Assembly (NCBI RefSeq): GCF_963853765.1
Contig: NC_088859.1
Span: 36,084,001 to 36,148,000, forward strand
Origin: Magallana gigas
Taxonomy: Eukaryota
Reading direction: 5' to 3'
DNA: 64,000 nucleotides
Each line of letters opens with the position of its first letter. The first letter of the stretch is position 1. This document shows positions 2,724 to 63,790 of the stretch, piece after piece. Both the position numbers and the translations under genes were made by a program. The notes beneath the pieces are model-generated. The model was not told where the DNA came from, ran no database searches, and saw nothing but the letters and a program-made list of their open reading frames with translations.

Positions 2724-4442
2724 TCAATATTTGGCTGTGTACTCCGGTGGGGCGCTGCTGATGGGGGGTGGGCTGGCAACTGGGAACCAGGCCTGCTCCT
2801 TTGTCCTCCCACCAATGGACGGGGTGTAATCCCGGCCCAGGGAGTGAGTGTTCTTCTCGGGATTCAGCTCAGTGCGAGAGTCGCTAATCTTCTTCTTGCA
2901 GCATTTCACGCGAATTATGCTGTAAAAGATGAAGGAATAAATACAAACTGTATTTTTTTTTTCAAAGTTGAACAAAAAAAATCGAATTGATTTAAGAGGG
3001 TTAGATGGTCTTTTCCATTTTTAAGACTAGATGTAATATAATACCGGTACATGTACATGAATTCATAATTTTGAGAGGAAGAGTTCTGTATGATAAGATA
3101 ATATTCAAATTTTATTTACAATATTTGGGGTTTTTTTTGGGGGGGGGTATTAAGTAAAAGTTTATGACCTAAGAAAGCGTATCAACAATTTTAAGGTAGA
3201 ATTGATGTGTACTAATTGACCACCCAGCCTCCTTATTATACTACATACCAGCCGACGACGATGCCGACGACAGTCAGGGCGACGACAAGGATGACGATTT
3301 TGACGATCATCGAGTGACGCTTCTTCCGGCGACAGTCGTCCTTGTCCTTCCTGTTGGATTTCTTGTCACAGTCATCATCGTCGTCATCTCGTTCTAGATA
3401 TTAAGAAAAAGAAGGCGATAATGATGTGAAGAAATGTACATCATAGATTCAAAATCATTAAATAATTATGTTTATTTATTATTTACGATGGCTCAATTTT
3501 CCCAAACAGTGAAGAAAATGTTGCATGCGCTGATCCAGATAAATTGTCAAGGGGGAGGGGGGGGGGGGTCGCGGGATATATTTGTTTGTCAAAGGATGGG
3601 GGGGGTCTTTACTAAATGAATTTAATGAGTTTGAATTTTAGAGGGGGGAGGGGTCTGGTTCCCACTGATATTACCCCTAGATCCGCGCATGTTTTGAGAT
3701 TGATCTGCTAGCTGCCTGAATGAATAGATTACCTGCTTTTATGCAGACCTTCCCCGACCCCCCGGAGGTAACTGTGCAGCACTTGTCCCCAGCTGTGGAG
3801 CACTGAGTGTCATCGGTACAGATCGGCAGAGAGCCGTTCGATCCCGTGGCGGGAACCGTATCCGGGCATTCTACGGACAAAAACAAATTGAAATTATGTA
3901 TAGTGATATTCAGTATTCAAAATAGAATAAAACATCTTTACACTCAAAATGAAAAGCTGATAAGTAACTTCTGTATATTTTCAAAATAAGAATTATTTAT
4001 TCTTAAGTATAAGTCTTAAGTTCTTTATAAGTATTTTCAAATAAGAAAAATATTTAGTATTTATATTAAGTATTCTTACTAGGCCTACATAGATTACGAT
4101 TACACATACAAGAGCCTTTATTGTGTGTAAAGAACGTTGGTAAAATGTTTGCAACTAAAATGAAAAATGATAGCGAAAATGCCTTTCAATTGGTTGTGAT
4201 TCTTACCTAGGTGAGAAGATGCAGCAATCTCACCTGAAAAATATCAATGTATATATGCAAAATTCAATTTATACTAGAAATTCATTTCTAAAATTAATTT
4301 GTAGATTATTCAATTTCTCTTTTGTTTTCAGATAGAGACATACATTTCCATTTGAAAAAAAAATCGATAAATTAAAATGTATCTTTTAATACTTACCGAC
4401 AAGGAAAATAATCACACAGAAAGCGAGTGTTTTAAACTCCAT
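2724..4442 (-). CDS. Cluster gene A: 183-aa type-I membrane protein (signal peptide, 6-Cys WAP/STMC6-like domain, poly-Asp/basic stalk, TM, PPxY tail)
   Basis: Exons 4397-4442, 4207-4233, 3733-3870, 3249-3393, 2724-2919; all GT-AG, total 552 nt in frame. MEFKTLAFCVIIFLVGEIAASSHLECPDTVPATGSNGSLPICTDDTQCSTAGDKCCTVTSGGSGKVCIKAERDDDDDDCDKKSNRKDKDDCRRKKRHSMIVKIVILVVALTVVGIVVGCIIRVKCCKKK...SAPPEYTAKY*. Confidence 0.88.
3524..3691. mobile_element. G/C-run MITE with CATGCGC(G)GATC termini in gene A intron 3
   Basis: catgcgctgatccag ... ctagatccgcgcatg; same termini as the 13896-14069 element. No clear TSD. Confidence 0.6.
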
Positions 4443-6760
4443 GCCTCACAGATATCTCCCGCGTAATGATAGACTATGCTAACAAGCTAGAGTTCAAAAA
4501 TACCCGAATACACGATCAACAGAAAAAATTCTTTGTTAATGTATTGACAGTCTTTAAGGTTCACGGATTAAAAAGGACAACTTCGTGCCTCCGATAAATC
4601 GTTTACCATTATACATTCATCAATGGATCTTTAAAAAGATTTTAAAACATATATTCCAACTTCGTGCGATTAGGCAAATAGTTCTTTATACACTGATCGA
4701 TTACACATATAATGCTGCTTATTGGCGTTTGAATCGTCCTTGTTCGGAAAATCACGTAATCTTTTTAATGAGGTTATATCTATTGGGTAGTTTGATAAAA
4801 ATCGATGTTGTAATAGTTGAATACAAAGAAGTCTTTGTTATTCCACTGAATGTATGATAAGCATCCATTTATTATTTAAATGCGGGTTCAATAATATTAT
4901 GAAATATGATGCAGGTTCAGAAAAGGGGATAAAAGCTTGATTTTTCCTTAAAATTTGAGTACTGTAAACTGGAATACTTTACGTTGTTTAAATTTACTAT
5001 ATTCGCGATTGGACAAATGTTCCGCGAAAATTTAGTCATTGTGAATACATTGTCATGTGATTTCAAATTTTTATCACCTAAATTCATCTAGCCTGTAATA
5101 ATGAATAATAACATGTACCAGGTCTTGCATTTCTCTCAAGATCACAGTAGCACTTGCTTAACCATTGCTGTCTGTCGTCAATCCTGCGATAGGCGTCGTT
5201 CGTCGTTAGTTACTTATCAATTAAACATAATAACGGACATGACAACATACATTCTTCCATAGAATGCTTAGACACATGTATATCCCCCCAAGGTCGTTTT
5301 TAAAATATATCCTTTTTCAGTCCTTGGATTCTCGCAGACAAACTATAGGTTATAAAGAGCGAGAAGGCCTCTGCCGCAATAAAATATTCATAACCCCTTT
5401 GATTCAGGTTCTTGGATTTAGGGCGGCACAATATACTGTATAGACCATGCATTATACACAAGTCTCCACTCTAGCGAGGGCATCTTACAGACAACAAAAT
5501 GCGTGTTTACGATAGGTAGAGATGCTTGTAAAATTACATGTAATTCGTGGTTCCAATAGAAGCTTGTTTCTGACGATTGGCATAATAAGTCTGATTGGTC
5601 TTATACACTGTACATAGCAGAATAATTGTTGCTTTATGAGGGCTAATGATGAGATATCTATCATTCTCACCCTATATCCTCTCTTGATCCGCTCTCTATT
5701 AGATTTTGGATATAACGAAGATTAATCAAACGCATGTATTACTTCAAATAATTAATGCTATGACGTACACAATGTCAGAAAATCAGTGAAATATTCGTAA
5801 AATTGAACGTAAACAAAGTTCTAAAAATCCACTTCCACTGGACTTTTATAATACATCGCAAAACAATGTGTTTTAAAAAAAAACCAAAACGAAAATAATC
5901 TCTTTGAAATCTAATACGTGTACTATATTTGCTTCAACAAATAATTTCGTTTCAGTTTATAAGCAAATCCCATTAGTACTTTCAGTACTTTGATATTTTA
6001 TCTTTGCTTACATTCCACCTCTAAATCAGCTACATATTTTTTTTATATTTTGCTCTACCAGATATTGATTATTGAATTACCATTGTGTACATACTTCAAA
6101 GGATTGTTTACACAAATACCCCACGTGTGTTTTATTCATATGATATCATGTGTCAGTAACGTTTTCTAGATACATGTATGAATATAGAAATCATTATTTT
6201 GCAATTTAGTCTTTCTATTCTAATATTTCTGTAGTGAACAAAAATCAATAAGACAACAAGGCATGGCCTTTTCTAGGAATTCTAACAATGTATCTGAAGT
6301 TTACATTATTACATGTATGGTTTTCCAGAATATACGGTAACGAAGACGTTGCAAAGTATACTTTGATTTGTAATTTATATAAGTATACACATGCAAAATA
6401 ATTTTATAATACCATATGTCACAATACTCTAGCTTTGCAAAAATGGCATTATTGCAAAGCCTTGTGTGTAAAATATAATTATCCTCTACACGTTGGCTAT
6501 ACCTTCATATTCCATACGGACAAAGAAGCCATTTTATTGATTAAATATATAATCATTCCAGCAGTTACACAGTTTCAGATTAGCAAAATCTTTCATAACG
6601 CATATTAAGTCAAGATCAAAGTGTCTTTTCGCAATTATTTTACTCGGTGAACACCATTAAAACACGTTTTTATTATCGACAGATACATGTTTTCAAAAAT
6701 AATTTCTCAACACAAAAGAAGTAAGAGTGAAAAAGTGAAAAATAAAGACGTAAAAAATAA

Positions 6761-8274
6761 TCAATATCTAATTTTTTCGTCCTGATTTGCAGTTTGTTTG
6801 TATTTGGGTGGCGGATCTACGGTATAAGCGGGAGGAGCGGACGGTGCCATGAAGTAGGGAGGGGGTGGAGAAGTGTCCATCCAGTTGTGTGGGGTTTTCT
6901 CCTTTTTACAAGGTTTATCCTCGTCTGTTGACTTTGATTTGACGGTATAATCTGAAGCTCGACCTTTCATTCCCCCACTCACTGTATTTAGATCCGTTCG
7001 AGAATTTCCTATTTTACTGCGGGCACGTGTACAGAACTTTCGGATAAAACTGTAAAAAAGAATGATATACAATGTAAAACGATTTAATTTTGTTTCTGAC
7101 TTAATACAGCCAGTTTCATAGAAGCCCATATTTGTTATTGGAAGATCCCTACGTCAACTTTCTCTATACAATTACATTTATTAACCAAACCCCTTACAGG
7201 TCTGCCCTAAACTTGAAAAATGACTTTTTTGGCAATTAACTGTCATATGGTAAAGAAAAATCCAAACATTTTACAGCATAAAAATTTGAACATTTTCCCC
7301 ATGTCTTTAAAGTTTGTACAGAACTCTCCGTGTAATGGAGGTAAAGATAGCCTATTAATGGCCACGACCATCAATCTCTCATATAAACTACATAAAGTTA
7401 GAATACTCACGTCAACATAACAATGATAAACAACACAACTATAAGAAAGATGGCTGTTATAATCAGAGGATGGACGTAGGTATGTCGGTGGCACTTTGAT
7501 TTTCTCTTCTTGTAGTCGGACCCTTTCTCTTCATCGTCACAATCATCATCATCGTCGTCGTCATCTTTTTTCGTATATTTGTCTAGTCAAAAAATAACGA
7601 GAGGCTCTAAAGATAGTTTATGTGTCTGTGTTTTATTAGAGCATATATATTTTAACGTTCATAGTTTAAATGCACAGTATGATTTTTTTTAATACTTGAA
7701 ATACATTTTCATTCTCTTTTTCAAATAAAAATTTGATTTAATTTAAATTTAGTATTATATTCAATCGTTAAAATTAGAAGAAGAAAAAAGAATCACATTG
7801 CAACACCTGCATGCAATTAACAGAATCAAAGCATATGGTTTATTTTCTCTAAATATATACAACGATATCAAATATCTGAATTTACCGGATTCTTAACACA
7901 GTCATATTAGTTTCTGTACATGGATCTTTGTGATTCTTTATCAAGCTTTATATGACATAACTCAATTCATCATGTAACGCACTACATATATACTGTGTAG
8001 TTCTCTACATATATGATTATATGTACCTTGGTCCACCGTGTCGAGACACCGCGGGCCGCTGGGAGTTCTACAACACTTCTCCTCCTGTCCACACTCCCCA
8101 TCACTCAGACAAAGGGGGGCTTTGTTCAGTTCATCCGGGTCCATTAGCTGGACCTTGTCCGAGGACGGACATCTCTCTCTACGGCTCGCTGTAAATGTGG
8201 GTTAAAAGTAATTGTTATTTGTTCCTTTAACGATAACAAAGAAACGATTGAAAATATGAGTTCATAACATAATA

Positions 8275-8329
<55 letters not shown>

Positions 8330-8475
8330 GTCAGCTGACTTTAGAATAAAGTATAACCATAAATAAAATAAGGAAATAAACACAAATCTTAATGTAATTT
8401 AAATAGAATATATAGCATACCTTGTACATTTCCGAAAACGAAAGCCAAAACGCAGGAAATCAAGAGGACCTTCAT
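6761..8475 (-). CDS. Cluster gene B: 225-aa type-I membrane protein (6-Cys domain, poly-Asp stalk, TM, three PPxY motifs)
   Basis: Exons 8421-8475, 8027-8188, 7411-7582, 6761-7049 (678 nt, phases 1,1,2). MKVLLISCVLAFVFGNVQASRRERCPSSDKVQLMDPDELNKAPLCLSDGECGQEEKCCRTPSGPRCLD...KKDDDDDDDDCDDEEK...KCHRHTYVHPLIITAIFLIVVLFIIVMLTFIRKFC...PPPPY...PPAY...PPPKY... Confidence 0.88.
8278..8327. repeat. (GA)n microsatellite in gene B intron 1
   Basis: Uninterrupted ga dinucleotide run. Confidence 0.95.
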
Positions 8476-9792
8476 TTCAAAAACATACCTTAAACCCCTC
8501 TGAAGCTATCCATTTCAGAATTATTGGCAGATCATCAACGAAAATAATTAGTTGCAAATAAAAAATTAAAGGGAAAAGAGATCGATATTGGCTCAATATA
8601 TTTTCATTATCCTTGAAATAACCCCGTTTTTATGTGTCAAATCTCGATATGCATGATGTTTCACAATACCTGCAAAAATAAATAAAGTGTGGATGGCATG
8701 TTTATTTTATTCAGACAGAATCAATACACTTAAGATTTTTTTAAAGGTACGTAATGTGTATTTGCCACTCGCCAAATCGGTAAAACCGAGTGCATTATCT
8801 AGAACATTTTCTTGAACATTTTCTTGGCAGTCATCCAAGAAACGTGACGGAGTTGATAAAAAATAAGTACTTAAAAACATTGCAATTGTATTGTGAAAGA
8901 TGCTCTTAAATTATACAAAAGAGGGTTTTGCCCTGTCGTGTTTCAGGCTAGTGTTCTTCAACCATATCGTAACAATATATATTGCGCTAAAAATATTTTC
9001 ATCTTTTGAAAACAACAATGCAACATATTAAGGTCATAAATGAATTAATGATGAAAAATAAATTATTTATTGAAAATCTAAATGGGGCTTGGTGGTCGTG
9101 GCTAATTTTGGGCTATATGAATTTTATTTTAGAAGAAGAAGTTTGTATAAAAACATAAGAAATATTAAAATATTAAATATAAATCATCAGGAATTTTTAT
9201 TTACTTAATAGTTTATTGCTGAAGAAATCGTGTCTAAAACTAGATGATTAATCTGTTGATCATCAATTCTGCTGAAAGTTTAAGGACTAAGTTATTTAGT
9301 GATACCCCGGCCAAGATTGATCTCGCATCCAGTTACGACTCAATTGTTTTCTGGATATTATAAATCACTAGAAAATTCCTTTAACTATTATTTACTCCAG
9401 TGTCAAGGTCTTATAAAGAGTGTTGATTTGGCATCATTGATGTCATGTGTCCTTGACTTGAAAAGGTAACCCGCCTTTTAACACTTACACTTAAATAAAA
9501 TATAGACAAAACATATAAACTATGGCATACTTTATTTGTCATTCTGTACACTTGTTTCATAATAAGTACTCAAACTACCCTGTCCTGCAGGGTTTAGATC
9601 GCCTGTTCGTTAATGACACCTAGGGTCTACAAATCCTCATGTTAATCTCAGCTTGAATAAAAAGTAAAAGTACAAGTTCAAGGTTCGATGCTCCAGTTGT
9701 AATGAAGACCTTCTTTAATTACTTTCATTAAGTATAAACATACAATTTAAAATCAGAACCGAGAAAAGTCAAATCAATGTCAGGTTTTGACA

Positions 9793-11139
9793 TTATATAC
9801 GATCCTTTTCCTCCTCCAGTTTCTTATAGGGAGGGTCAGACTTTACGAATACTTCAGGGGAGAAGTCGAGCCCCAGAAACCCTTTCATGGTCGATTTGTC
9901 GGGAACGGGGGCGAAAGTTCCGGGGGTGTATGTGTTTTTCTTGGCAGCTTCTGCTGCTTTTCTCATGCGCTGTCTTCGTCGGCGAATGCAGCTACAAGAA
10001 ATAATACACACAAATTATTATTACGTTGTCTCTATTTTTTCATCGAATATACATTCTTCATTAATAAAATCATTTGAATACTTCAGTACTATACATACCA
10101 GGCAACAATGGCGACGATTGTGATGAGAACCACCAATCCGACGATAGGAGCAGCGATCTTCATGATTTTGTGGATCCTTTTATGATGATGACACCTCATG
10201 CGATGTTTTTTATGATGATTTTTATGATGTTCCTCATCAGCAAAGCGGTCCGTCTCGAATACTTTGTCCTCTTTCTCGTGATGGTCATCGTCATCATCAT
10301 CATCATCGTCATCGCATTCGTAGTCTTCTCCCTCCTTTCCCATGAGCTTCATCTTCATCTCTTCCCAAAATGACTTCTCCTCCTCTGCCGAAAGTTCCTC
10401 ACCTAAGCAATAACGATAAAAGAAAAAGTTGTTTTGAAATTCTAGATAATAATCAAATCTTTCAATGTTTTGAAATGGCCTTTAGGTCAGTCTAGTGAAT
10501 TTTGATCTTTAGATTTATTTGTTATATTTGTCCCGAGGATTTGGAATGGGTGTCATTTCATCTCAGTTTACGTGATGCAAGAAACACGCCTTTGTTCCAG
10601 TCTACTTACCGTCCATTCGTGGCCTGATGCAGAATTTTTTGCCGCTCTTTGGACAAGGACAGCACATCAGCCCCTCCGGACAGTATGGTTTCTCTGCTCT
10701 GCATGGCTTAGGTTTTAACATATACTCAAGCATCGAGAATTCTCGGGGACATTTCCCCTTTGCAGGATCTGGAATCAATCAAATAAAAAGAAATAAGAAC
10801 ACATACTGGGTAGATCTTATGTTTCGACGACAGTGCCAAATGATATGTCGATAGTATATATAAGGACGTCACTCAAATCTTAAATGATAAGACTATCATT
10901 CTACAGCGTGTTTTACTGGAAATCGATAAATAAATAAATAAAATACGTATTTTTGTTTTTGTTTATAATTTATATTGTATAATATAATATTATGAAAATA
11001 ATACTATTATAAATAAATATATAAATAATATAATATAAATAATAATAATATAACAAATTTCATTACCTGGAGTTGGATCCTGTGAATAACACAGCCCAAC
11101 AATGACCACAGCGACGAGGAGCGAGAATGTGTGCTTCAT
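9793..11139 (-). CDS. Cluster gene C: 244-aa type-I membrane protein (WAP-like 7-Cys domain, Asp- and His-rich stalk, TM, YxxL tail)
   Basis: Exons 11067-11139, 10610-10768, 10099-10402, 9793-9991 (735 nt, phases 1,1,2). MKHTFSLLVAVVIVGLCYSQDPTPDPAKGKCPREFSMLEYMLKPKPCRAEKPYCPEGLMCCPCPKSGKKFCIRP...YECDDDDDDDDDHHEK...HHKNHHKKHRMRCHHHKRIHKIMKIAAPIVGLVVLITIVAIVACCIRRRR...DPPYKKLEEEKDRI*. Confidence 0.88.
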
Positions 11140-11185
11140 GGCTGTAGAGAGTCGTCTGCTGGATTTAACGATCGGCTGCGGCTTA

Positions 11186-11193
11186 TATTTATA
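11186..11193 (-). promoter_or_regulatory. Probable TATA box of cluster gene C
   Basis: TATAAATA on the - strand ~47 nt upstream of the ATG at 11139. Confidence 0.5.
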
Positions 11194-11550
11194 TGTAGGT
11201 AATGGAATTTACGTACCCGACCTGTATATCCAGAATGTGCAGCCAGATGGAACAGGAAGCAAGCTTACTAGGGTACGGATTCGTGATCTTCACACAATGA
11301 GGAACTATTTTTAAAGGGATCCATTACATAGCGCCGATAAAACGAGGACTGTTTGGGGTTTTGATAAGCTTGTATTTACATTTAACAAAAATGAAATAAG
11401 AAGTTTTAAGTACTAGGGACCCCCCCCCCCCCCGTCCCAAGCACGACGAAGCTCATCATCCATGTTATAGATTGTCATACCGAAGTAAGGAAATAAATGT
11501 TACTAGATATTTTATTCATTACAAAATGCTTCGTTGATAATTAGAATGTA

Positions 11551-12639
11551 CGAAAGCCCATTGAGCTCATTTTCGTAGGTAAAAAAAATTTTTTTTTCAC
11601 GAAATAACGCGAAACTTTCGCGAATAAACTCGTAGCTATCGCGATATAACGCGTAACTTTCGCGAATAAACGCGAAAATTACGCGATATAACGCGTTATT
11701 TTCGCGAATAAACGCAAAATTTTTGCGAATAAACGCGAAACTTAAATATAAATATTGTTATTTCATAAAAGAACCCCTTTGAAGAATAATTACTGAAAAC
11801 AAATATGCTAATTTGAATAAAACAAAATGATATTATATAAAGATGTAAATAAATTAGATTTAACCATATACAAATTAACATAACTTCAAACGTAGGAAAT
11901 CTTTAAAATCTTAGTACTGATTTTCAAAGGACACAATGCATCGCGCTTCTCACATTCTAATGGGCGCTGTATTATTGAAAATGAGGCAGCAACATATTTT
12001 ATTCATATAACAATTTTAATTCGAATTAAACGTTTTATTAAGTATCATTCAAGAATTTAAAGGATATCATTGTTTAAAACGTTATAATATATGTTATATC
12101 GCCGCGACATAGTTAACGTCTAGTTTAATATCAGAAAGATAAGTCAAGCTGTGAATTAAAATTTTTAAGATAATCAGTTCGAACACAGGGTCGGCAAACA
12201 AATGAAAATTGTAATATGATGCTCAAACTTATTATCTATCTTGGACATATAACATATAAAAATATTATAAAGTTTTATCAGATTTATTATTATCTATATG
12301 CAAAAAAGATAATTTTTTCTTCATAAATCAACGTAACACGGATATCATAATAATAATGAATAATAAGTATTTTATGATATAAAACTTAAAATGTGTTTGT
12401 TTTCAATCGTTTTTCTTCATAAGGGTTTTGTATGAAATGATGATATTTATATAATGGTTTCGCGTTAATTCGCGAAAGTTACGCTTTTATTTGCGAAACT
12501 AACGCGTTATATCGCGAAAATTTTGCGTTTCTTCGCGCAAGTTTCGCGTTTATTCGCGACACTAACGCGTTATATCGCGAAAGTTTCGCGTTTATCGAAA
12601 AAAAAATTAACCTACGAAAATGAGCTCAATGGGCTTTCG
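11551..12639. mobile_element. Foldback-like non-autonomous DNA transposon with long modular TIRs and TA TSD
   Basis: TA|cgaaagcccattgagctcattttcgtagg ... cctacgaaaatgagctcaatgggctttcg|TA. Subterminal tandem ttcgcgaataaacgcgaaa units are mirrored at both ends; the core is AT-rich and non-coding. Confidence 0.88.
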
Positions 12640-13112
12640 TAAGATTAAGACCAAAATATCAATTTTTGATGAAAACCATTCATGTACACTTTATCTATTG
12701 TTCCTGGCTTTTAATACTTAAAGTTCCAAGCGTAATTTATTCGTTTGCAATGTGTATGGTGTCCCGATAGGGCCATTTGCAAAAGTGTAACAACGCGCTA
12801 GCCCTTGATATGTTTGATATGGGAGAATCATATTTTAAAAACATATTTTAACTCAAGTATCGTATTATTAATTCACATTAGTTGAAGTATCCTGCAATAT
12901 TTAAATTTTTTAGTGCCACTGACATTTTAACAGTCTTTGTGAAAACACTACGAATTGTCTTTGTACATGTAATGTACATTCCAATTAAAGTTTACATGAC
13001 GTATTGTTGGGTTGCAAGCGGGGTTTGCATAATTAAAAGAAATGAAAATCATCATAAATATATCAATATTCCAATGATTAATTGTACAGTTGCTGAAAAA
13101 TTATTTAAATAT

Positions 13113-13266
13113 AATAAGGAATCATTCTTTAAAACTAGTATTATGAGGTGATAATTTGAGTCGAGGCGTGATCAAATCTATCATAAAAACCTTCGAGATT
13201 GATTCGATTTGACCACGCCTCGACCAAAATTATCAACTCTTAGTACCCAAAGAATGATTCCTTATT
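13113..13266. mobile_element. Palindromic MITE (TIR aataaggaatcattcttt)
   Basis: aataaggaatcattcttt ... aaagaatgattccttatt with an internal inverted gaggcgtg(a/g)tcaaatc. A partial related copy lies at ~54030-54105. Confidence 0.75.
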
Positions 13267-13895
13267 CCTTAATTAATGTTATTTTTCAAAAATGCTAAAT
13301 AAGCTCATAAAATTACAGTAATATTGAATTACAAATCGTGATAATTTTCTACGCCAATTTTCTGCCAAAAAATATAGTCTTTGTTAAATTCTAAATTTGA
13401 TTTCTATATTTCTATGCCAAATTGTACAATAATAAGAAAAAAAGGTAAATATGATATTTTTATTTCCTTGCATCTTAATTTAGTGAACATTTGATCAAAG
13501 GATGACTGCACGTAACGCCCTGTTTTGGGCCCTTTTCGGTCGCTTCTGTTGCGTGTATTTCTTAACCTAATATCACTTTTGTTAATTTTTTAAAGAGTCT
13601 AGTCAATTTGCAATATCTATTAAGATTTTAGACTGTGATACAAAAAGCTCATTCTACTTTTTTCTCCTTACAACTTTCGAAAAAGGAGAATTTTCGCGTA
13701 TATGCCCTTGATCAAACATAAGATTGATATTAATATGCATGAGAGGTGGAGCTGACATTATCAGAATTGTACTAAAATTAGACTAGCATTAATGACAATG
13801 CCATGTATAAAACATTATGTGATCACTCTTTCACCATAACCCTATCTAGTCTATATGGTACAAGTATACTAATACTATCGCTTCAACAATTAGAC

Positions 13896-13898
13896 CAT

Positions 13899-13932
<34 letters not shown>

Positions 13933-14029
13933 GAAGGATAATTGTGTTTGACAGGGGGGGTCCGAGGCATATTTTCGCGATAATTTTACTATGTAAATTT
14001 AATAAATTTTCATTTTCCAGGGGGGGTCG

Positions 14030-14069
<40 letters not shown>
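13896..14069. mobile_element. hAT-like MITE with 8-bp TSD
   Basis: aattagac|catgcgcggatc ... gatccgcgcatg|aattagac. CA-starting TIR plus an 8-bp TSD is the hAT signature. Confidence 0.85.
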
Positions 14070-14133
14070 AATTAGACCATGCCCATGTAAGTATATACAT
14101 GTAGAAGACTTTAAATCAATGCTTGACAACTTA

Positions 14134-14714
14134 TAGCTGCAGGTCTGTAGCTCCCGGTCTGAAAAAATTCGGATGGACGACCTGGGAGCTACAGTGCCTC
14201 CCACAGTAAAAATCTGCAATTTACGACGCACAAAAATGTTTTAGACTAATTAACCTTATTTTTACACAAATTCTGTGGAAAACATTAGTACCATTAAATT
14301 CTTCAGTCAATTTACTACTGATATCGGTACTTTACTTGCCTCAAACTTTCTTTTAAACACGTTAACCGACCTCAGAAATTGAAGAAAGTTAAATTCAAGT
14401 CGAGATCGAGAGTCGCCATTTTTACATGTAAACAAACTGCACCACTTCACATTACGGGGCTGGTGAATGGTGATGGTGTTTTAAAGAATATCAAAGGCAA
14501 GTAAAGTGACGATATCTTTAGTAAAGTGTCCAAGGAATTTTTTGGAGTCAAATATCTGTATAGAATGTGTTTGGAAATAATTAAGGTTAATCAGTCCAAA
14601 ACTAGCGCAAATATTTGTGCGCCGTTAATTGCAGATTTTTAGTATGGAAGGCACTGTAGCTCCCAGGTCGTCCATCCGAATTTTTTCAGACCGGGAGCTA
14701 CAGACCTGCAGCTA
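14134..14714. mobile_element. MITE with ~60-bp perfect TIRs, TA-flanked
   Basis: tagctgcaggtctgtagctcccggtctgaaaaaattcggatggacgacctgggagctacagtgcct is matched by its exact reverse complement ending at 14714. Confidence 0.9.
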
Positions 14715-14832
14715 AACGAGTTTGAAAAATATTGTCCTAGTTAGCACATAACATTCTACCTTACACGTCACGTGATGGAATTTTGTATTCACAAAGTTTC
14801 CTGAGGTGAGAAATCACGTGGTGAATTATAAT

Positions 14833-15306
14833 GGGCACGCTTGATTAAGCTTAACTTGGTGTACACCGGTATACACCGGTGTAAAAATTTTGTATTGTAT
14901 ATCAAGTCCACTTCAATGGTGTAGTGTACATGGCATAGGGAAGTTAAGAATGAATATGACGGAAAAGGGTGCAGTTTTAACAAAGAATCTGCTATTCTGC
15001 GACAATTAATAGTTTTTTTTGTGATATAAATGCAATAAAATAAACACATTTCAAATGGCTTTCATACAAACCACAACTTTTATGCGACTTCTAATCCGTT
15101 ACATTATTTTAAAAATCATTTTCCAAGTTTCCATCATAACATTCGTCCTCCATATTGGTTCAGTGAGCTACACCCAACAACACATGCCCCTGACTCGATG
15201 TAGAAAAGTGTACACCCGGTGTACACCTAAACGCTACACGCTACCTTTGCACTTGATTTACAAAAGTGTACACGGTGTACACCTTTTGGTAAAATCAAGC
15301 GCGCCC
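14833..15306. mobile_element. MITE, PIF/Harbinger-like
   Basis: TIR gggcacgcttgatt / aatcaagcgcgccc, possible 3-bp aat duplication, internal ggtgtacacc palindromic repeats. Confidence 0.6.
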
Positions 15307-15668
15307 AATGTTCAACATGCATCAGCCCTTGGTTACAAACTTTGATAATGCAAATATACAACTACTGTTAAACGGAGAACAAAAGACAAACATGCGCTGA
15401 CTATGTATGAAGTCAGTATAAAAGTGGGTGTCCTCATTAATTATCGTATGGAGATAGAAGAAATCGTGATGACCCCCGCCTATGAAGACAAATTCGTTTA
15501 ATAAAGCTTAAATTGACAAAGATACAAGAAACTTTATTTCATTATAATTCAATTATAATTCAATGGAGTCAAACAATTAATAATAATTATTATCAAATCT
15601 AAGATTCTCGCCAAATATTATAAGCCAAGATAAAAAAAAAAAAAGGACGTGCATACAAGAACTACTTT

Positions 15669-16493
15669 AACACCCCTGCGAATGTGTTCGGAATGTTTTC
15701 TTTATTGTTGCTAAGTATGTAATAAATCCAGAGGTGCTCGAATGAAAGTTCACGAGACTTCACTGAGATTTGTTCAGTTCCAGTGAAATTTTGACCGGAT
15801 GTATAAGTGTTCGGATAATATTCTCAAAATACATAAGTACTGATCGATTTTCATATCATATTCTACTTTGATTTATGTTAAAACATCAATATCTTTTAAG
15901 ATGTATGTCTTATTTCACCATCTAGCGGTTTTTTTTAAATCAAACGATGATAATCAGAACAGAGTTATCGTTCGTGTTCAACCACGTGTAGAGTGGTTAA
16001 TGATATAAAAATTAGGTTGCTTAATAAAATCATAGCCATGTTTGATGCTTGTGGTGTGCAATACCAATTTTTTAAAAAAATTAATGGGTGAATGTTTTGC
16101 ATAAAAACTTATTGTATCGAGCCATTTTCAAGGAACATTCTGCATAAAATAGTACAGTCTGTTTCACTATTATTTTATTACTAGGTCAGGCGCGGATCGA
16201 AAATTAATTCTTAGAGGGGATCTCTACTACGCATGTTTATTGTCGCAACAGCAGAGAAAAAAAACTATTTTTTGTATTGTTGTGTTTATTTCTAGAACAC
16301 ATTTTATCCACCAATTAATGAAGATAAAGTTTAAAATCAATAAACCTCTAGAATTTATATTTGACTACAAGTATACCTAGATTCTCTAAAATAGACTATA
16401 AACACGAGGCACGATTTTTACTGCGAAACAGAAAGTGTCAAATAAAACCACGTGGTCTAAAATTTAAATGACAATAACATTCGCAGGGGTGTT
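15669..16493. mobile_element. Non-autonomous TIR element (17-bp TIR aacacccctgcgaatgt)
   Basis: aacacccctgcgaatgt at 15669 and acattcgcaggggtgtt ending at 16493; AT-rich non-coding interior. Confidence 0.7.
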
Positions 16494-17585
16494 TAAGGCA
16501 TGTTATAAAAATCGTTAAGGTTTTCGTGCCGATTCTGACGTACAAAATTGACATTTCACACTTAAGAATTAATTTTAATGTGAAGGTGATAAAAGTTAAT
16601 CATAAAATTAAACACTTGCACATATTTTTAGTTGATTGTCTAAATTCAATTGTAAAAAGCTTTCACAGTGTAAAATTTAATTTTGATAAAATTAATAAAT
16701 ATGACATCGACACCATATCTGTTTATAACGCTACTAACGTACCATGTGATATCGTTAAACTGATAAACACATTGTATATAGGGTTTTTTTTTCTTATCAT
16801 TAGGTGCAAAGTAAATAAATATTTTCACATGTAGACAAGTTTGAAATATTCCAATTCTAAAAACGGTATTCTTCAAATATTATTTTATCAATCAAAGTAC
16901 TGAAGTGCTGACGAAAGTTGATTATTGATTATTATTTATGTTATTTTGCATGGAAATAGATTCTCAGCTTGTATTTAAATAATTACGCAATTTTTTCTAT
17001 TAGAATTCTCGTGCTTTTCCCACAAGAATTCCTAGCTAAGGACGGAAAACTCATAAAAATTGAATCCAAGAAAGTTTGTAACAAACAAATAATAAGTGTT
17101 GTCCACGCCAGTACTGCTTTAGTTTGGATAGTCTACCCTTGATTCTAGGCACAACTGCTGTAGAAATAGCGCGTTAGTAATCAATGACAGCGAACCAGTC
17201 TTATTTAACTATGGGGTAAGAATATACAACTGTATATGACTACAAAGTACAAACTACAATCAAAGTACTGAAGTACTGTCGGGAGTTGATCTTATTGATA
17301 ATTATCAATTTTAAAATCAACGATATGTTATTTTGCCTGGCAATTAGTTTCTAATCTGTATTTGAATTACGTTTTACATTTAATTTTTTTTTTACATTTT
17401 TATAATATGAATTCTCGAACTTTTCCGACAAGAATTTTCAGAAAATCCCGTATGAATCATGTTGTGTGATATTTAAAGATATTAAAGATAAAATTAATTC
17501 CATTAAACTGTATCAGTAATTAATGAAATGTTTCTAAAAATTGTACACGTCTGGATCCAAGCAATATTGAGCTCTAGTCTTGTTC

Positions 17586-17677
17586 AACCAGACGCTCGGC
17601 TGTCTCCGTTAATCTCCGACTACCAAGAGAGACTCTCTGCTTGTCGGTGATTTACGGAGACAGCCGAGCGTCTGGTT
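17586..17677. repeat. ~92-bp near-perfect hairpin (miniature palindromic element)
   Basis: aaccagacgctcggctgtctccg pairs with cggagacagccgagcgtctggtt, with further inner pairing. Confidence 0.8.
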
Positions 17678-18072
17678 TTGAACTCTGGCGTAGGAATACA
17701 TGCAACTACAAAAAACAATTAAATTGTTCGTACTATATAAAATCTGACTATTTTCAAGGTATTTATAAATACGTTTCTTTTGAAAAACAATGGTACAACA
17801 TACAGTACACCGAATTTATCTATTATTTTCAAGATCTACGTCTTGTCAGTGGTGATGATTTGTGCTTAGGTCCAAACACTGTTTCACTTTCGGTTTGCCA
17901 GAGTAACTGCATAGGAGAGTTGATTAAAATCAACTCCCAAAAACTATCCTTATTGTTTATACATGCCTTTTAAAATCCGAGATGCAGTCATTGAAAGGAC
18001 ATATATTAAAATAAAATTATAATGAACCATATATTGATTACTAATTAGTTAATATGTAATAAATTAACTCAT

Positions 18073-18075
<3 letters not shown>

Positions 18076-18116
<41 letters not shown>
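18076..18116. repeat. (CT)n microsatellite just downstream of gene D
   Basis: Uninterrupted ct run. Confidence 0.95.
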
Positions 18117-18119
<3 letters not shown>

Positions 18120-18175
18120 CTCTCATGATACAACATTATGTAACAAAAAATGGTTAAAACAACACAATATCTATA

Positions 18176-19452
18176 CTAAATTGATGCAGTTCTCTCCCTT
18201 TCTTGATCATGCAGTTGCACATTTGTAACGTCACTTGGGCGGTTGCGTGGATTTGCTTGTTTTCCCGCGAGGTCTTCCATATTAAGGAATACTTTCATGC
18301 CTTTTCCGACCCTCATTACGTATACAGGATTTTGGTCGTGGACGGCAGTTGCCATATTTTGTTTCCTCAATTTTTTGTTGGGGTTTGATTTAGTATTGCC
18401 TTTTTTCTTCTGACTGTTTAAAAAAGAAAAAGAAAGCTTAAAAACGAAAATACACATAAAATTAACTGAAACGTTATTTCGATGCATATTTTTCTTGAAA
18501 CGAAAAATAAAATCCGTTCAATTAAGAAAATTGCAATGTAAAATCAATCCCTTGGCTGTATAATGACTTACTAAATCATCAGCCCGGCTAAACCAACGAC
18601 GACACACAATCCACCAGAACAGAATAGGAAAAGTATATGTCTCCACCGGAAACCATTGGAACAGCTCCTTATTTTTCTGCCAATTTTATCAAAACATTTA
18701 TAACTTGTCCCGGATCGCAACGCCTTCTCCATACGCCCCTTATGCCAGTTCTCACTTTTATTTGTCTGAGAATTCTCCCACTCCGACAAGTTTAAGATTT
18801 TTGACAACTTGGATCGTAGGTCCATTGACCGGGGCTCATTTGTCTTTTTATCTGTTAAAAATACATTAAGTGTATTTTAAAAATAGTTTTAAAAACTGTT
18901 ATAATGTTGGTTTGAGAAGCATAACACTGAATCTTTGACATGTTTGGCATTACCAACGATGTCCTTACCATGCAAATAAATGCACATGTTTCCTCCTAAA
19001 ATCCCACAGCATTTACCGTTAGGGCAATCGGAATCCTTCTCGCAGAGAAAATCAGTCGTTTTGATTTTACGAGAAAGAGCATGCTTAACAGTACCCGGAA
19101 ACCCAACTGGGCATGCCTGGTGTTCGGCGCCTGAAAAAACTTGCAACAATGATCAAAGTAGAAGGAACTTGATGGTCACAATCATAATTATCACGCCATT
19201 ATTATCATCGGCATCAATTCACTCTATATGTAAGAATGTCAATACTATTCTATATTAGATTTTAAATTTACATATTATAGTAATCTTCTTCCTCAAAGAC
19301 ATGGAGTATGAAATTACATAATGAAAACTAATAATATTATGGGGGAAATGCACCTATTAACTTATTTGTGAGAATTATGATATTATACCTGATTCGACTA
19401 AAATGATGCAAGCGTTGAGAAAGACTCCAAAAATACAAAAGCTGAGAGACAT
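18176..19452 (-). CDS. Cluster gene D: 247-aa type-I membrane protein (6-Cys WAP-like domain, basic stalk, TM, NPxY tail)
   Basis: Exons 19389-19452, 18969-19130, 18572-18851, 18176-18413 (744 nt, phases 1,1,2). MSLSFCIFGVFLNACIILVESGAEHQACPVGFPGTVKHALSRKIKTTDFLCEKDSDCPNGKCCGILGGNMCIYLH...HILFLFCSGGLCVVVGLAGLMIYQKKK...DQNPVYV... Confidence 0.85.
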
Positions 19453-21772: not shown

Positions 21773-21812
21773 TATTTTGATAAAATTAGCTTGATGCTAG
21801 AGTCGGGCTACA

Positions 21813-24800
21813 TCAAGTATTCCTTTCACTGTCTTGCGTGTTTTCGTCATAATTCTCAGACTCTAAATTGTTATAATTCGGATTTTCACCAAATTGTTGA
21901 ACTAGATCAATGTTATCAGTGGCTTGCCTTTCTTTTCTGTATCTATACAAGTATATGCCGCCCACACCAATCGCCAACCCAACGATAAATAGAGCTATAG
22001 ATGCTCCGGCCAATGAGCCTAAAGCAAAGAAAATTAAAAAAAAATTAGACAAGGAAATCTTAGGATACTATGAATTTTTTAAGCTAAAAAATTTAAAGAA
22101 TTATTCTCAAACAGTAAAATTTTGTTCAATAACTGCAGTCTAGTACCTCCGCTATAGCCATTATTAGGTTGGCTTGACCTCCTGCCTTGAATTTTACTTG
22201 GTTGAGAATACGATGACGGCTGGTAAAAATTTCCTACAAACAATTAATAAAAGGGGAAAATATTGTATGTTGAGAGCTTGATTCATGTAAAACACCATCC
22301 ATATCATAAATATTTTTGTTGGAATTCAAAAATTACATGTATCACGTAGAATTAATTATGTGTATGCTCATTACACAGTAATTTACGTGAAGCACAATCA
22401 TGGCTTTTTGATAACAACAATCAATCATTTTTAAAAATTGCAAAAATCTGAATACAAGTTTTATTCGCAAAACCTTACTTGAATATAAGTCACACATGTC
22501 GCTCTTAGAAACAGCGTTTCCAGACTGAAACGGATGAGATGATGTCAGTCTACACAATGACGTCATATTGCAATATGCAAAGCTCCTGCAGGCTGCTCCT
22601 TCCTGTTCCACACATAGTTTGGCGCACTGGGAACTGGTGATATTCGAAAATTCCACAACGTTTGTAAACGATATTGTCATCCTTTTTAACAACTTGAAGT
22701 CATAGAAATAGTTCTCTAAAAAATAAAAGAAGAAATATATCGAAGAACTGTCAGACCAAGTTTGGCAATGTGTTTGGTATACACGAGAAGAACACTGAAA
22801 AGGCAAGTATAGTCATTTCCTTATCTACATATACTCACTGCTGTAAAAGGAGCATGTAAGACTCTTTGAAGCTGTTTTTCCCACCATATCAAGTTCATGC
22901 ATCTTCAACAGGAGACAGTTTTTGGTACTTGTACAGTATTCAAAAGATTTGCACTGAAATGCAGTATATTGTGAGCAAAGCTTTGCACAAAGGTTTGCGG
23001 ATGGCACATTGGGGAGTGTTGCGTCAGCCTTTACTGAATACGTCAAACCAGAGGATTCTGTGTACTGATCAAGAAAATAACCTGTGAAAAGTAAGAAGAT
23101 CCATTTTATCACGAGCTTGGACTTGGGTAGTTATCAAACAGCAAAGTGACGTAGGTCTGTCTATTTCATTGTTGACTACTCAGCCATAGCTCTTTGAAAT
23201 CAACAAGATTTGACTGGCTTTTGAGCTTTAACTACGCAATCGGTGCATGTTTTGCTTAAACCAGGGTAATTTTATACGAAAATGCCAAAATATAAGATCG
23301 TTACGTCCTATCGAAAGTACAAGGCCTTGTTAAAATGGATCTTAATCAAAATCTTAGAAAGTCCAGAGACTTCAATTATTGAATTTTCCAGATAAGGGGA
23401 TTTGAATAACGTGACTTACGTGAGTACAAATCACAGTATTCCTGACGTTGTACAATTCCAGAGGAGTTGTCCGCATGGACGTGGCTAAGGAAGCAATCAC
23501 CAAGGTCAAAACAGTAACTAAACGATAGGCACTCGTACTCCATGTTGTTTATACAGCGGCGCGCGCAGTCCTCAACCGACAACCCAGCAATGGAAGTGTC
23601 GGTATTGGTAAAAATAAAGTATTGGCGATAGATGTAGAAATGTGTCAGAAGTAGATCTAAAACAGAGGGGAAATACATTATAATGCTTTTTTTCTAAAGA
23701 TTTAAACTATTTCACGACAATCTGATCCAGTACATTTTGATTTCACATATCAATTTATATTTTAAGTTTCAGAAATTATCTCCCAAAAGATCTTTTACAA
23801 CCAATTTGAAAAAAGTATGAACACTATCTATGCATCAGTTGTATCAATAAATTACTTGATTCACTTGGTCTTCCGTTTCTTAGAATACGTGTCCTAATAT
23901 TCGTTGCGTTAAATGTCTGAAATTATAAACAAAAAACCACTTCTTACCAAAACTATCTGTAGCATGGCATGTTATGAAATGTTCTTAATCAGTTTATGTC
24001 ATTCTAGGATTTCAGAATACGAAATACTTAGCCAACTTTCTGTTGCAGCTGTCCATATTTCTTGAAGAGAAATACTAATATATGTCCTAGTAGTTGTTTT
24101 TACATTTACATGCATTTACAATGTACATGTATATCACTTACGTAAATTGCACTTCCATAATTAACGGGCACTTGTATTAAGCCATCGTAGATTGAATTGG
24201 AAATCTTCGATACTATGACGTCAGTTGGTGGTTGCACAGTGGATGTCGAATTTACAGTTCCTGTTCGTAGAAAAGTGGCATTTTTTAAAAGAACAGATAA
24301 AGATTCATAGTGCAACAGATTTTCACTTCATTTGCAAAAAGATACAGATTAGTTTTAGATTAAAACTGGGTGAAACAAAGCAAAACAAATCTTTAAAAAA
24401 TAAAAGTACATGTATATATTATCAATATAATATGAATATATTATCAATATAATATGAAGGATGAAATCCGTTTATTGTTTTAAGGGATTTTGCGGCTTTT
24501 TTGGATTGCTGGAACAGGGGGTTCCTGAAAATGCAATCTTGCGTACAACCAAGCTTCAAATACACATAAATGTTCAAGCTTACTCAATATTAATCTTGCA
24601 TGTCATGCGTGTCCGCAAATTATGCCCCAAAAAGGAACGTATGATTTCAGATTTGTGTACAAACATTACTGTAAATTAAAAAAAATATTACTGTGGTTCT
24701 AATTTCATTATGTTTACGGTTTTATGATCTTCCTGTGAATTCCTGTGAATTCAAATTATAATTTCTTCAATTAAGACAACGTACATCTACCCACGTAAAT

Positions 24801-26688: not shown

Positions 26689-26724
<36 letters not shown>

Positions 26725-63639: not shown

Positions 63640-63671
<32 letters not shown>

Positions 63672-63790
63672 ACAACAACAACAGACACAAGTGCAGCAGA
63701 CACCCCCACAGCAAATTGTGCAACAGGCACAACCTGTCCAGACTCAAATAACACAACAGCAACCTCAGACAACACAGATACAGCTTCCTG
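62383..63790 (+). CDS. NFYC: Nuclear transcription factor Y subunit gamma (partial; continues beyond the window)
   Basis: Exons 62383-62511, 62688-62759, 63047-63160, 63339-63434, 63553-63790. Histone fold [82 protein letters not shown], followed by a poly-Q region. Confidence 0.98.
63626..63685 (+). repeat. CAG/CAA poly-glutamine tract in NFYC
   Basis: Mixed cag/caa codons encoding a long Q run. Confidence 0.9.

What the first reader, a model, noticed from the sequence alone, without database searches (positions are those of the whole stretch)
2724..19452. Four-gene tandem family of small Cys-domain single-pass membrane proteins, invisible to ORF calling
Seen: genes A-D are co-oriented and share one exon plan (signal / Cys domain / stalk+TM / tail; intron phases 1,1,2) and the C..C..C..CC..C pattern, yet their other residues have diverged almost beyond alignment. 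Known: this pattern resembles a WAP domain lacking the C2-C7 disulfide pair. It also matches the STMC6 (Shisa/WBP1/VOPP1-like) adaptors, which have post-TM cysteines and PY motifs. Inference: an old, diversified bivalve family of membrane-tethered WAP-like receptors or adaptors, possibly uncharacterised, acting in mucosal immunity, protease control or shell formation.
Basis: partly seen in the sequence, partly recalled or inferred. Interest (0 to 1): 0.8.

Follow-up and report, generated by a model that had tools for sequence, protein, structure and literature searches.

The report
Oyster membrane-anchored WAP-domain gene cluster
Four neighbouring oyster genes encode small single-pass membrane proteins with a six-cysteine WAP-type outer domain and short inner tails carrying sorting motifs; the cluster is real, conserved across oysters and unstudied, but it combines known parts rather than being a new kind of system.

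Summary
Four co-oriented minus-strand genes (A-D, 2724-19452) assemble in frame with GT-AG introns. B is confirmed by a spliced transcript contig. D matches an NCBI model in C. angulata except for one residue. A has five exons, not four: a conserved 27-nt mini-exon was missed. Only A (one) and B (three) carry PPxY motifs; C has a conserved YKKL and D has (N/D)PVY.

The order D-C-B-A, downstream of a LolA/PAN gene, is kept in C. virginica and Saccostrea cucullata; Ostrea edulis shows C-B-A (its fetched flank holds no D exons or LolA/PAN gene). pN is far below pS in all four genes. NCBI calls the orthologues 'uncharacterized protein'.

The ectodomain is a WAP domain without the C2 and C7 cysteines. 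Evidence: Pfam WAP passes for A and B; profile comparison with six-Cys nematode WAPs gives E 5e-9 to 6e-7 for A, B and D; the only PDB sequence match is SLPI; the AF2 model's top fold hits are WAP domains. For C, WAP identity is unproven.

The family is not STMC6/Shisa/WBP1 by Pfam; the likeness lies in the layout only. I found no relatives outside oysters.

Likely role, inferred: surface or endosomal adaptors or receptors that link a WAP binding module to NEDD4-type ligases and clathrin sorting. Interest is moderate.

The parts
4397..4442 (-). Gene A exon 1 (ATG, signal peptide start)
   Evidence: In-frame model, GT donor; orthologous exon in L007 and L008
4207..4233 (-).
   Evidence: AG/GT flanks; homologous 27-nt exons in C. 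virginica and O. edulis give the NCBI product lengths 184 and 189 aa
3733..3870 (-). Gene A WAP-type six-Cys domain exon
   Evidence: Pfam WAP 21.1 bits, cut-off 20.8; 80% identical to the C. virginica exon
3249..3393 (-). Gene A stalk (poly-Asp, Cys pair) and transmembrane exon
   Evidence: KD 3.28 hydrophobic segment
2724..2919 (-). Gene A tail exon: CCKKK juxtamembrane cysteines and a C-terminal PPEY
   Evidence: the PPxY is kept in C. virginica (PPPY) and O. edulis (PPVY)
8421..8475 (-). Gene B exon 1 coding part (the transcript extends 5' to about 8664)
   Evidence: Transcript contig L005 aligns to 8664-8421
8027..8188 (-). Gene B WAP-type domain exon
   Evidence: Pfam WAP 28.7 bits; junctions confirmed by L005
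7411..7582 (-). Gene B stalk and transmembrane exon
6761..7049 (-). Gene B tail exon with three PPxY motifs (3' UTR runs to about 6556)
   Evidence: the three PPxY motifs are invariant in 6 oyster sequences
11067..11139 (-). Gene C exon 1 (signal peptide)
   Evidence: orthologous exon in L007, L008 and L009
10610..10768 (-). Gene C Cys-domain exon (same Cys register plus an extra Cys, CCPC)
   Evidence: no Pfam WAP hit; hhalign against WAP not significant
10099..10402 (-). Gene C stalk (poly-Asp, His-rich, Cys pair) and transmembrane exon
9793..9991 (-). Gene C tail exon: CC juxtamembrane cysteines and a conserved YKKL
19389..19452 (-). Gene D exon 1 (signal peptide)
   Evidence: model differs by 1 aa from NCBI LOC128167031 of C. 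angulata
18969..19130 (-). Gene D WAP-type domain exon
   Evidence: Pfam WAP 18.6 bits, just under the cut-off; hhalign against nematode WAPs E 5e-7
18572..18851 (-). Gene D stalk (Cys pair, no poly-Asp) and transmembrane exon
18176..18413 (-). Gene D tail exon with NPVY
   Evidence: DPVY in C. virginica

Best explanation
This is a conserved, expressed four-gene tandem cluster that I could find only in oysters. Each gene encodes a small type I single-pass membrane protein with these parts:
- a signal peptide;
- one six-cysteine WAP-type ectodomain (a WAP fold without the C2-C7 disulfide);
- a charged stalk carrying one further Cys pair (poly-Asp in A, B and C);
- one transmembrane helix;
- juxtamembrane cysteines in A, B and C;
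- a short cytoplasmic tail.

The tails carry different conserved short motifs: one PPxY in A, three PPxY in B, YKKL (YxxPhi) in C and (N/D)PVY in D.

Shown here: the gene structures, expression of B, conservation, purifying selection, and WAP homology for A, B and D.

Inferred: the ectodomain binds an extracellular or luminal partner, a protease or another ligand. The tail decides trafficking and turnover. A and B would recruit WW domains of NEDD4-family HECT ligases, which the genome encodes. C, and perhaps D, would engage clathrin adaptors through tyrosine motifs. On this reading the proteins work like the PY-tailed single-pass adaptors CYYR1, WBP1, VOPP1, Shisa and PRRG, but were built independently on a WAP domain.
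For: Gene models:
- All four assemble in frame with GT-AG introns.
- B's four exons are matched block by block by a 1072-nt transcript contig.
- D differs by 1 aa from an NCBI model in C. angulata.
- A and C orthologue models reproduce the NCBI product lengths.
- RNA-type runs hold about the exonic share of the A stretch and of the B+C stretch.

Conservation:
- Order D-C-B-A after the LolA/PAN gene in C. virginica and S. cucullata; C-B-A in O. edulis.
- pN/pS is low: omega is about 0.13 (A), 0.19 (B), 0.13 (C) and 0.28 (D). The A tail exon has the lowest omega in A; the B and C tail exons are among the lowest in their genes.

WAP identity:
- Pfam.
- The family profile finds trichinellid multi-WAP proteins at E 1e-10 to 2e-5 among 1.84 billion proteins.
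- hhalign against those six-Cys WAPs gives E 6e-7 (A), 5e-9 (B) and 5e-7 (D).
- The only PDB sequence hits are SLPI domain 2, with C2 and C7 unmatched.
- The AF2 model has pLDDT 80. Its top matches are WAP domains in PDB (four of the top five Foldseek rows), in VIA-align (three of the top four) and in Swiss-Prot AFDB (WFDC1 probability 1.0, TM 0.63-0.65).

Topology: each protein has exactly two hydrophobic segments.

Tail function:
- The three PPxY motifs are invariant in 6 B orthologues.
- The genome has WW+HECT loci.
- CYYR1, with the same layout and three PPxY motifs, binds WWP1, WWP2 and ITCH through them (PMC11399591).
- Language-model look-alikes of B are WBP1-like, CYYR1, VOPP1 and Shisa-like. 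Scores are 0.77-0.80, so this is a lead only.
Against: - No binding, localisation or tissue data exist.
- Motif-based inference is generic.
- C and D lack PPxY, so one mechanism does not cover all four genes.
- C's ectodomain is not demonstrably WAP: there is no Pfam hit, hhalign gives E 0.03, and the AF2 model has pLDDT 61 with no WAP fold hits.
- The fold-match statistics for the 53-residue domain are weak in themselves (Foldseek PDB E 0.3, Z 3.5).
- dS is saturated between C. gigas-type and C. virginica sequences, so the omega values are rough.
- Splicing of A and C in this genome itself was not seen directly.
Confidence: 0.55

Rival explanations
1. They are membrane-tethered protease inhibitors or antimicrobial WAPs. 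The ectodomain would inhibit host or pathogen proteases at the cell surface, like the membrane-anchored Kunitz inhibitors HAI-1 and HAI-2. It might be shed. The tail would only set residence time.
For: WAP homology to SLPI, elafin and waprins. The loop between C1 and C3 is strongly conserved within each orthologue group (A exon 80% identical between Crassostrea species). The genome holds many other WAP genes.
Against: The C2-C7 disulfide is missing. In SLPI it pins the loop that aligns to this region (its role is from established knowledge of WAP inhibitors). The loop is longer here and is predicted partly helical. The strongest constraint sits in the tails, not the ectodomain. No assay was done.
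Confidence: 0.25
2. They are biomineralisation or metal-handling proteins. The poly-Asp stalk (and the His-rich stalk in C) would bind Ca2+ or Zn2+/Cu2+ at the mantle cell surface, with WAP as in nacre proteins such as perlwapin.
For: Runs of 6-10 Asp in the A, B and C stalks, conserved in four genera. C has a His-rich stalk. A perlwapin-like protein is among the fold hits.
Against: D lacks the acidic run. A membrane anchor and sorting motifs are not features of shell matrix proteins. There are no tissue data. The literature search gave no shell-proteome link.
Confidence: 0.07
3. They are true but very divergent members of the STMC6 superfamily (Shisa/WBP1/VOPP1/CYYR1), homologous to it rather than convergent with it.
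For: Same layout. Sub-threshold Pfam hits of WBP-1 (E 0.04) and CYYR1 (E 0.01) on B. Atlas look-alikes.
Against: Those hits cover only the membrane span and the Pro-rich tail. No Shisa_N, WBP-1, VOPP1 or CYYR1 hit falls on any ectodomain at E<=10. Genome-wide six-frame scans place the matches of these families elsewhere. The ectodomain is significantly WAP. The profile search with B orthologues found no STMC6 protein.
Confidence: 0.04
4. The models are chance open frames or decaying pseudogenes.
For: None beyond the lack of direct junction reads for A and C.
Against: Transcript for B; NCBI model for D; 1:1 orthologues in four genera in conserved order; pN far below pS.
Confidence: 0.01

Closest known systems
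WAP 'four-disulfide core' domain proteins (Pfam PF00095): SLPI, elafin, waprins, WFDC1, and especially the six-Cys WAP repeats of Trichuris/Trichinella 'WAP domain-containing proteins'
   Same: Same Cys register C1P...C3-x5/6-C4-x4/6-C5C6-x7/10-C8, with the D.xC and KCC motifs. Pfam passes for A and B. Profile-profile E is 5e-9 to 6e-7. The predicted fold matches WAP domains. The nematode repeats also lack C2 and C7.
   Different: Known WAP proteins are secreted, single or in tandem arrays. These proteins have one WAP domain tethered by a charged stalk to a membrane span and a motif-bearing cytoplasmic tail. No such architecture turned up in the literature searches.
STMC6 adaptors (CYYR1, WBP1, WBP1L, VOPP1, TMEM92, Shisa)
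   Same: Signal peptide, small Cys-rich ectodomain, one membrane span and a short tail with one to three PPxY motifs (A and B). CYYR1 uses three PPxY motifs to bind WWP1, WWP2 and ITCH (PMC11399591).
   Different: The ectodomain is WAP, not the STMC6 Cys domain. The Pfam models fail. C and D have no PPxY.
Other PY-tailed single-pass proteins with borrowed ectodomains (PRRG Gla proteins, Commissureless; PMC5578492 listed, not read)
   Same: A small extracellular module plus a PPxY tail as a trafficking adaptor (from general knowledge).
   Different: Different ectodomain and no sequence relation. The comparison is by analogy only and was not tested here.
Membrane-anchored Kunitz inhibitors HAI-1/HAI-2 (SPINT1/2)
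   Same: A small disulfide-rich inhibitor-type domain on a type I membrane anchor (general knowledge).
   Different: Kunitz rather than WAP; no PPxY tails; not tested here.

Membership tests
WAP (PF00095) | Match to the Pfam WAP model above the gathering score (20.8 bits) | tested here: met
   A 21.1 and B 28.7 bits. B orthologues score 22.9-23.6. D scores 18.6, just below the cut-off. C has no hit, so the feature is met for A and B only.
WAP (PF00095) | Eight cysteines forming four disulfides (C1-C6, C2-C7, C3-C5, C4-C8) | tested here: not met
   Only six cysteines are present. C2 and C7 of SLPI align to non-Cys residues. The same six-Cys form occurs in 30 trichinellid repeats that Pfam scores as WAP. 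Disulfide pairing itself was not tested.
WAP (PF00095) | Core spacing C3-x5-C4-x5-CC with the KCC motif, and C1 followed by Pro | tested here: met
   Invariant C1P, C3, C4, C5C6 and C8 in 19 sequences. Spacings are x5-6, x4-6 and x7-10.
WAP (PF00095) | WAP fold | tested here: inconclusive
   B model: pLDDT 80. Top hits are WAP domains in PDB Foldseek (four of the top five rows), in VIA-align over 48,161 chains (three of the top four) and in Swiss-Prot AFDB, but the scores are weak (E 0.3; Z 3.5; E 0.018 with TM 0.63). C model: pLDDT 61 and no WAP hits.
STMC6 / Shisa-like (Shisa_N PF13908, WBP-1 PF11669, CYYR1 PF10873) | Match of the ectodomain or whole protein to the family models above cut-off | tested here: not met
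   No ectodomain hit at E<=10. WBP-1 scores 15 bits against a cut-off of 28.1, and CYYR1 16.6 against 31, both on the membrane span and tail only. Genome scans put the matches of these families at other loci.
STMC6 / Shisa-like | Six conserved cysteines in the pattern C*C*CC*C*C (recalled from Pei and Grishin 2012; not read here) | tested here: not met
   The pattern here is C*C*C*CC*C. The reference pattern comes from memory, so this row is weaker than the Pfam rows.
STMC6 / Shisa-like | Single membrane span followed by a tail with PPxY motifs | tested here: met
   A has 1 and B has 3 PPxY motifs, all conserved. C and D have none. So this is met for A and B only.
Lustrin_cystein (PF14625) | Match to the Pfam model | tested here: not met
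   No hit for any of the four ectodomains at E<=10.

The most novel reading that the evidence does not exclude
Oysters built, independently of the STMC6 and PRRG families, a ligand-coupled ubiquitin-ligase adaptor on a WAP domain. The ectodomain would capture an extracellular protease or microbial factor. The PPxY or YxxPhi tail would then drive NEDD4-dependent or AP-dependent internalisation and lysosomal disposal. The four anciently split paralogues would cover different ligands and different sorting routes. This would be the first membrane-signalling or clearance role for a WAP domain.
Probability: 0.15. Interest if true: 0.65.

Novelty: new variant of a known kind. Interest (0 to 1): 0.4.

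Why it matters
WAP domains are known as secreted protease inhibitors, antimicrobials and matrix components. A conserved family that ties a single six-Cys WAP domain to a membrane span and to ubiquitin-ligase and endocytic motifs would widen what this domain is used for.

It would also add a second, independent origin of the 'small Cys-rich ectodomain + membrane span + PPxY' adaptor design.

For oyster biology it supplies four conserved, unnamed surface proteins that can be tested directly for roles in protease handling, infection or mantle function.

It does not open a long-standing question, and all its parts are known kinds.

Tried and rejected
- Read laying. No range covering those places was sent to any search tool afterwards; only local scripts read the window file.
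- Complex prediction. An oyster ITCH/WWP-like WW domain (L010) was folded with the B tail. The result was 'no answer' (score 0.04) and counts neither for nor against binding.
- The search for homologous proteins. A mixed alignment and the B-orthologue alignment retrieved no full-length A or C protein and no relative outside oysters. The word index and length window limit this, so absence is not shown.
- C ectodomain. AF2 gave a low-confidence model and Foldseek gave no WAP hits. This is inconclusive.
- MAFFT on only the four paralogue exons mis-registers the cysteines of C and D. The profile used therefore carried that flaw. The alignment becomes correct once orthologues are added.
- hhalign in global mode gave uninformative statistics. 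The local-mode run was used instead.
- Literature searches for WAP with transmembrane and oyster, WAP with PPxY, WAP with membrane-anchored, and the six LOC identifiers found nothing relevant.
- The search of earlier findings returned nothing for this place.
- A furin-type cleavage site in the stalk (RRKKR in A) was considered and dropped, because it is not conserved in C. virginica or O. edulis.
Full report
**What is there**

On the minus strand between 2724 and 19452 lie four genes, in the transcription order D, C, B, A. I read the minus strand and assembled each gene in a script. All junctions are GT-AG and all four coding sequences are open.

- B is 225 aa, C is 244 aa and D is 247 aa. Each has four exons with intron phases 1,1,2.
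- The end coordinates of the finding are exactly A's stop (2724) and D's ATG (19452).
- A regular expression for the cysteine pattern finds these four places in the six-frame translation of the window, against 0.0 on average in 200 shuffles.
- A profile of the four domain exons finds only these four places in the whole 564-Mb genome.

**Are the genes real?**

- B. A 1072-nt Logan transcript contig (L005) encodes a 225-aa protein (P0018) that differs from my model by one residue. It aligns to the window in four blocks that end at my junctions, and it adds the 5' and 3' UTRs.
- D. The NCBI model LOC128167031 of Crassostrea angulata (P0020, 247 aa) differs from my model by one residue.
I sent those places to no search tool afterwards. 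Indirect support is good:
  - NCBI annotates four co-oriented genes of 230, 232, 229 and 184 aa at the orthologous place in C. virginica. It annotates 197, 252, 225 and 199 aa in Saccostrea cucullata, and 286, 218 and 189 aa in Ostrea edulis.
  - Each window exon finds its counterpart there in the same order.
  - Orthologue models built with the same junctions reproduce the NCBI lengths for C. virginica B, C and D and for O. edulis B.
- RNA-type runs hold 0.28-0.39 of the words of the A stretch. They hold about 0.5 of the B+C stretch, close to the exonic fractions, whereas DNA-type runs hold 0.74-0.98. This is suggestive only.

**A correction to gene A**

No four-exon model of the A orthologues gives the NCBI lengths. 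A five-exon model with a 27-nt phase-1 exon does. That exon reads AEITASSTP in C. virginica and SQISASPHP in O. edulis. The window has the homologous exon at 4233-4207 (GEIAASSHL), with AG and GT flanks. A is therefore 183 aa with phases 1,1,1,2. The mini-exon completes the signal peptide.

**Conservation**

The order LolA/PAN gene, then D, C, B, A is kept in C. virginica and S. cucullata. C-B-A is seen in O. edulis, whose fetched flank shows no D exons or LolA/PAN gene. In C. angulata, D and the LolA/PAN gene align with the window.

Between the window and C. virginica, pN is far below pS in all four genes. The rough omega values are 0.13 (A), 0.19 (B), 0.13 (C) and 0.28 (D), with dS saturated. 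The tail exons of A, B and C have some of the lowest values, 0.08-0.15.

So the four paralogues separated before the oyster genera did, and all are under purifying selection.

**What the ectodomain is**

- Pfam WAP passes its gathering score for A (21.1 bits) and B (28.7). D falls just short (18.6) and C has no hit.
- The family profile was searched with HMMER against 1.84 billion representatives. It returned 17 proteins at E<=0.001. Apart from exon-level ORFs and a few spliced oyster proteins, these are multi-domain proteins that Pfam scores as WAP at E 1e-50 to 1e-70. They are named WAP proteins of Trichinella and Trichuris.
- Their 30 repeats have the same six-Cys form, C1P-x12-17-C3-x5-C4-x5-CC-x7-C8.
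- Profile-profile comparison against those repeats gives E 6e-7 for A, 5e-9 for B, 5e-7 for D and 8e-10 for the three together, but only 0.03 for C. The paralogues compared with one another give E 8e-4 to 0.2.
- Against all PDB sequences the family profile hits only SLPI domain 2 (E 4.5e-4). The alignment pairs C1, C3, C4, C5C6 and C8 and leaves SLPI's C2 and C7 opposite non-cysteines.
- An AF2 model of the B ectodomain, built from a family-only alignment, has pLDDT 80 and a beta-hairpin around the CC motif.
- Its best matches are WAP domains in three searches:
  - Foldseek against PDB: SLPI twice and omwaprin twice among the top five rows, best E 0.3.
  - VIA-align over 48,161 chains: omwaprin Z 3.5, SLPI 3.2 and nawaprin 2.9, three of the top four rows.
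  - Swiss-Prot AFDB: WFDC1 probability 1.0 and TM 0.63-0.65, then WFIKKN2, WAP and waprins.
- Each score is weak, as expected for 53 residues, but the agreement is complete.
- The C model is poor (pLDDT 61) and finds no WAP.

C's place in the family therefore rests on four things:
- its position in the cluster;
- the identical exon plan and phases;
- the invariant Cys register;
- the shared stalk design.

**The rest of the protein**

- Each protein has exactly two hydrophobic segments, the signal peptide and one membrane span.
- The stalk carries one further Cys pair in all four. A, B and C have a run of 6-10 Asp before a basic, His-containing stretch next to the membrane. C is strikingly His-rich.
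- Cysteines follow the span in A (C..CC), B (FC) and C (CC), but not in D. Palmitoylation of these is an inference.
- Tails:
  - A ends in a conserved PPxY: PPEY here, PPPY in C. virginica and PPVY in O. edulis.
  - B has three PPxY motifs that are invariant in six sequences.
  - C has a conserved MKGFLGLDFSPEVFV...YKKL. Its 'DPPY' is not a PPxY and is not conserved.
  - D has NPVY, which is DPVY in C. virginica.

**How it probably works**

Shown here are the anatomy, the conservation and the WAP homology. What follows is inferred from established knowledge of the motifs.

- PPxY binds WW domains of NEDD4-family HECT ligases.
- Single-pass proteins with this layout act as ligase adaptors, activators or substrates. 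CYYR1, for example, has a signal peptide, a Cys-rich domain, a membrane span and three PPxY motifs. It recruits WWP1, WWP2 and ITCH through them at late endosomes (PMC11399591).
- The oyster genome has at least three loci with clustered WW exons next to HECT exons.
- YxxPhi and NPxY are clathrin-adaptor sorting signals.

I therefore think A and B couple a WAP-type binding module to ubiquitin-dependent sorting, and that C, and perhaps D, use tyrosine-based sorting. What the WAP module binds is open. Classical protease inhibition is less likely than for SLPI, because the disulfide that braces the inhibitory loop is absent and the loop is longer and predicted partly helical. It is not excluded. 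The loop is well conserved within each orthologue group, so it is doing something specific.

**Relation to STMC6/Shisa/WBP1**

- No Shisa_N, WBP-1, CYYR1 or VOPP1 hit falls on any ectodomain, even at E<=10.
- On full-length B, WBP-1 (15 bits) and CYYR1 (16.6 bits) stay far below their cut-offs and cover only the membrane span and Pro-rich tail.
- Six-frame scans of the genome place the Shisa_N matches at C2:33.26-33.30 Mb and C7:19.3 Mb. They place the weak WBP-1 and CYYR1 matches elsewhere, never at this locus.
- A profile of six B orthologues found no STMC6 protein among 3351 candidates.
- A language-model search did rank WBP1-like, CYYR1, VOPP1 and Shisa-like clusters among the look-alikes of B, at 0.77-0.80, below the level that counts as more than a lead.

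I read this as convergence of layout, not membership.

**Range and novelty**

All relatives found are from Ostreidae. This is limited by what the protein collections hold and by the short domain. NCBI names them 'uncharacterized protein LOC...', and no paper in the library mentions the identifiers or this architecture.

The family is thus unstudied and its domain combination appears undescribed, but each part is a known kind. I rate it a new variant of a known kind and of moderate interest.

Noticed in passing
   Followed up: no
window about 14149; L006 15249-21277: The C. angulata locus aligns to the window at 96-98% from the LolA/PAN gene through D, down to window 14149. About 6 kb of it then has no counterpart in the window, and no C exons lie within 10 kb of D there. 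This is a structural difference (insertion or deletion) between D and C in the two assemblies.
   Followed up: partly
window about 21782-32251 (minus strand): The upstream neighbour of D is the orthologue of a gene of about 1430 aa with LolA_2nd_metazoa and PAN_1 domains. It flanks the cluster in C. virginica, S. cucullata and C. angulata, so it is a useful synteny anchor.
   Followed up: partly
window 3540-3680 and 13800-14230: G/C-homopolymer-rich stretches give similar Gly/Pro-rich ORF translations in intron 2 of gene A and between genes C and D. They may be copies of one interspersed repeat.
   Followed up: no
window 8285-8345 and 18075-18130: A (CT)n microsatellite lies in intron 1 of gene B and a (GA)n microsatellite lies just downstream of gene D.
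   Followed up: no
window 44557-44625 (minus strand): An EGF-like cysteine-rich exon (..CKNDGHCYNGRCCCRPGYTGEFC..) of another, unexamined gene.
   Followed up: no
window 45250-45438 (+) and 63630-63731 (-): Cys-codon-rich low-complexity tracts give poly-Cys open frames. They are probably simple repeats rather than genes.
   Followed up: no
G000 C8:24.51-24.64 Mb, C4:24.80-25.16 Mb, C2:11.64 Mb: Large tandem clusters of canonical WAP-domain exons. At least 42 Pfam WAP matches occur genome-wide, and gene B's exon is the weakest of them.
   Followed up: no
G000 C2:33.26-33.30 Mb and C7:19.32-19.34 Mb: Tandem groups of Shisa_N-matching exons. These are probably the oyster's own Shisa-like genes and are unrelated to this cluster.
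   Followed up: no
L008 7466-8823 (O. edulis C orthologue): The NCBI product length (286 aa) could be reproduced only by models that read through what are introns in the other species. This suggests a mis-annotated or alternatively spliced C orthologue in O. edulis.
   Followed up: partly
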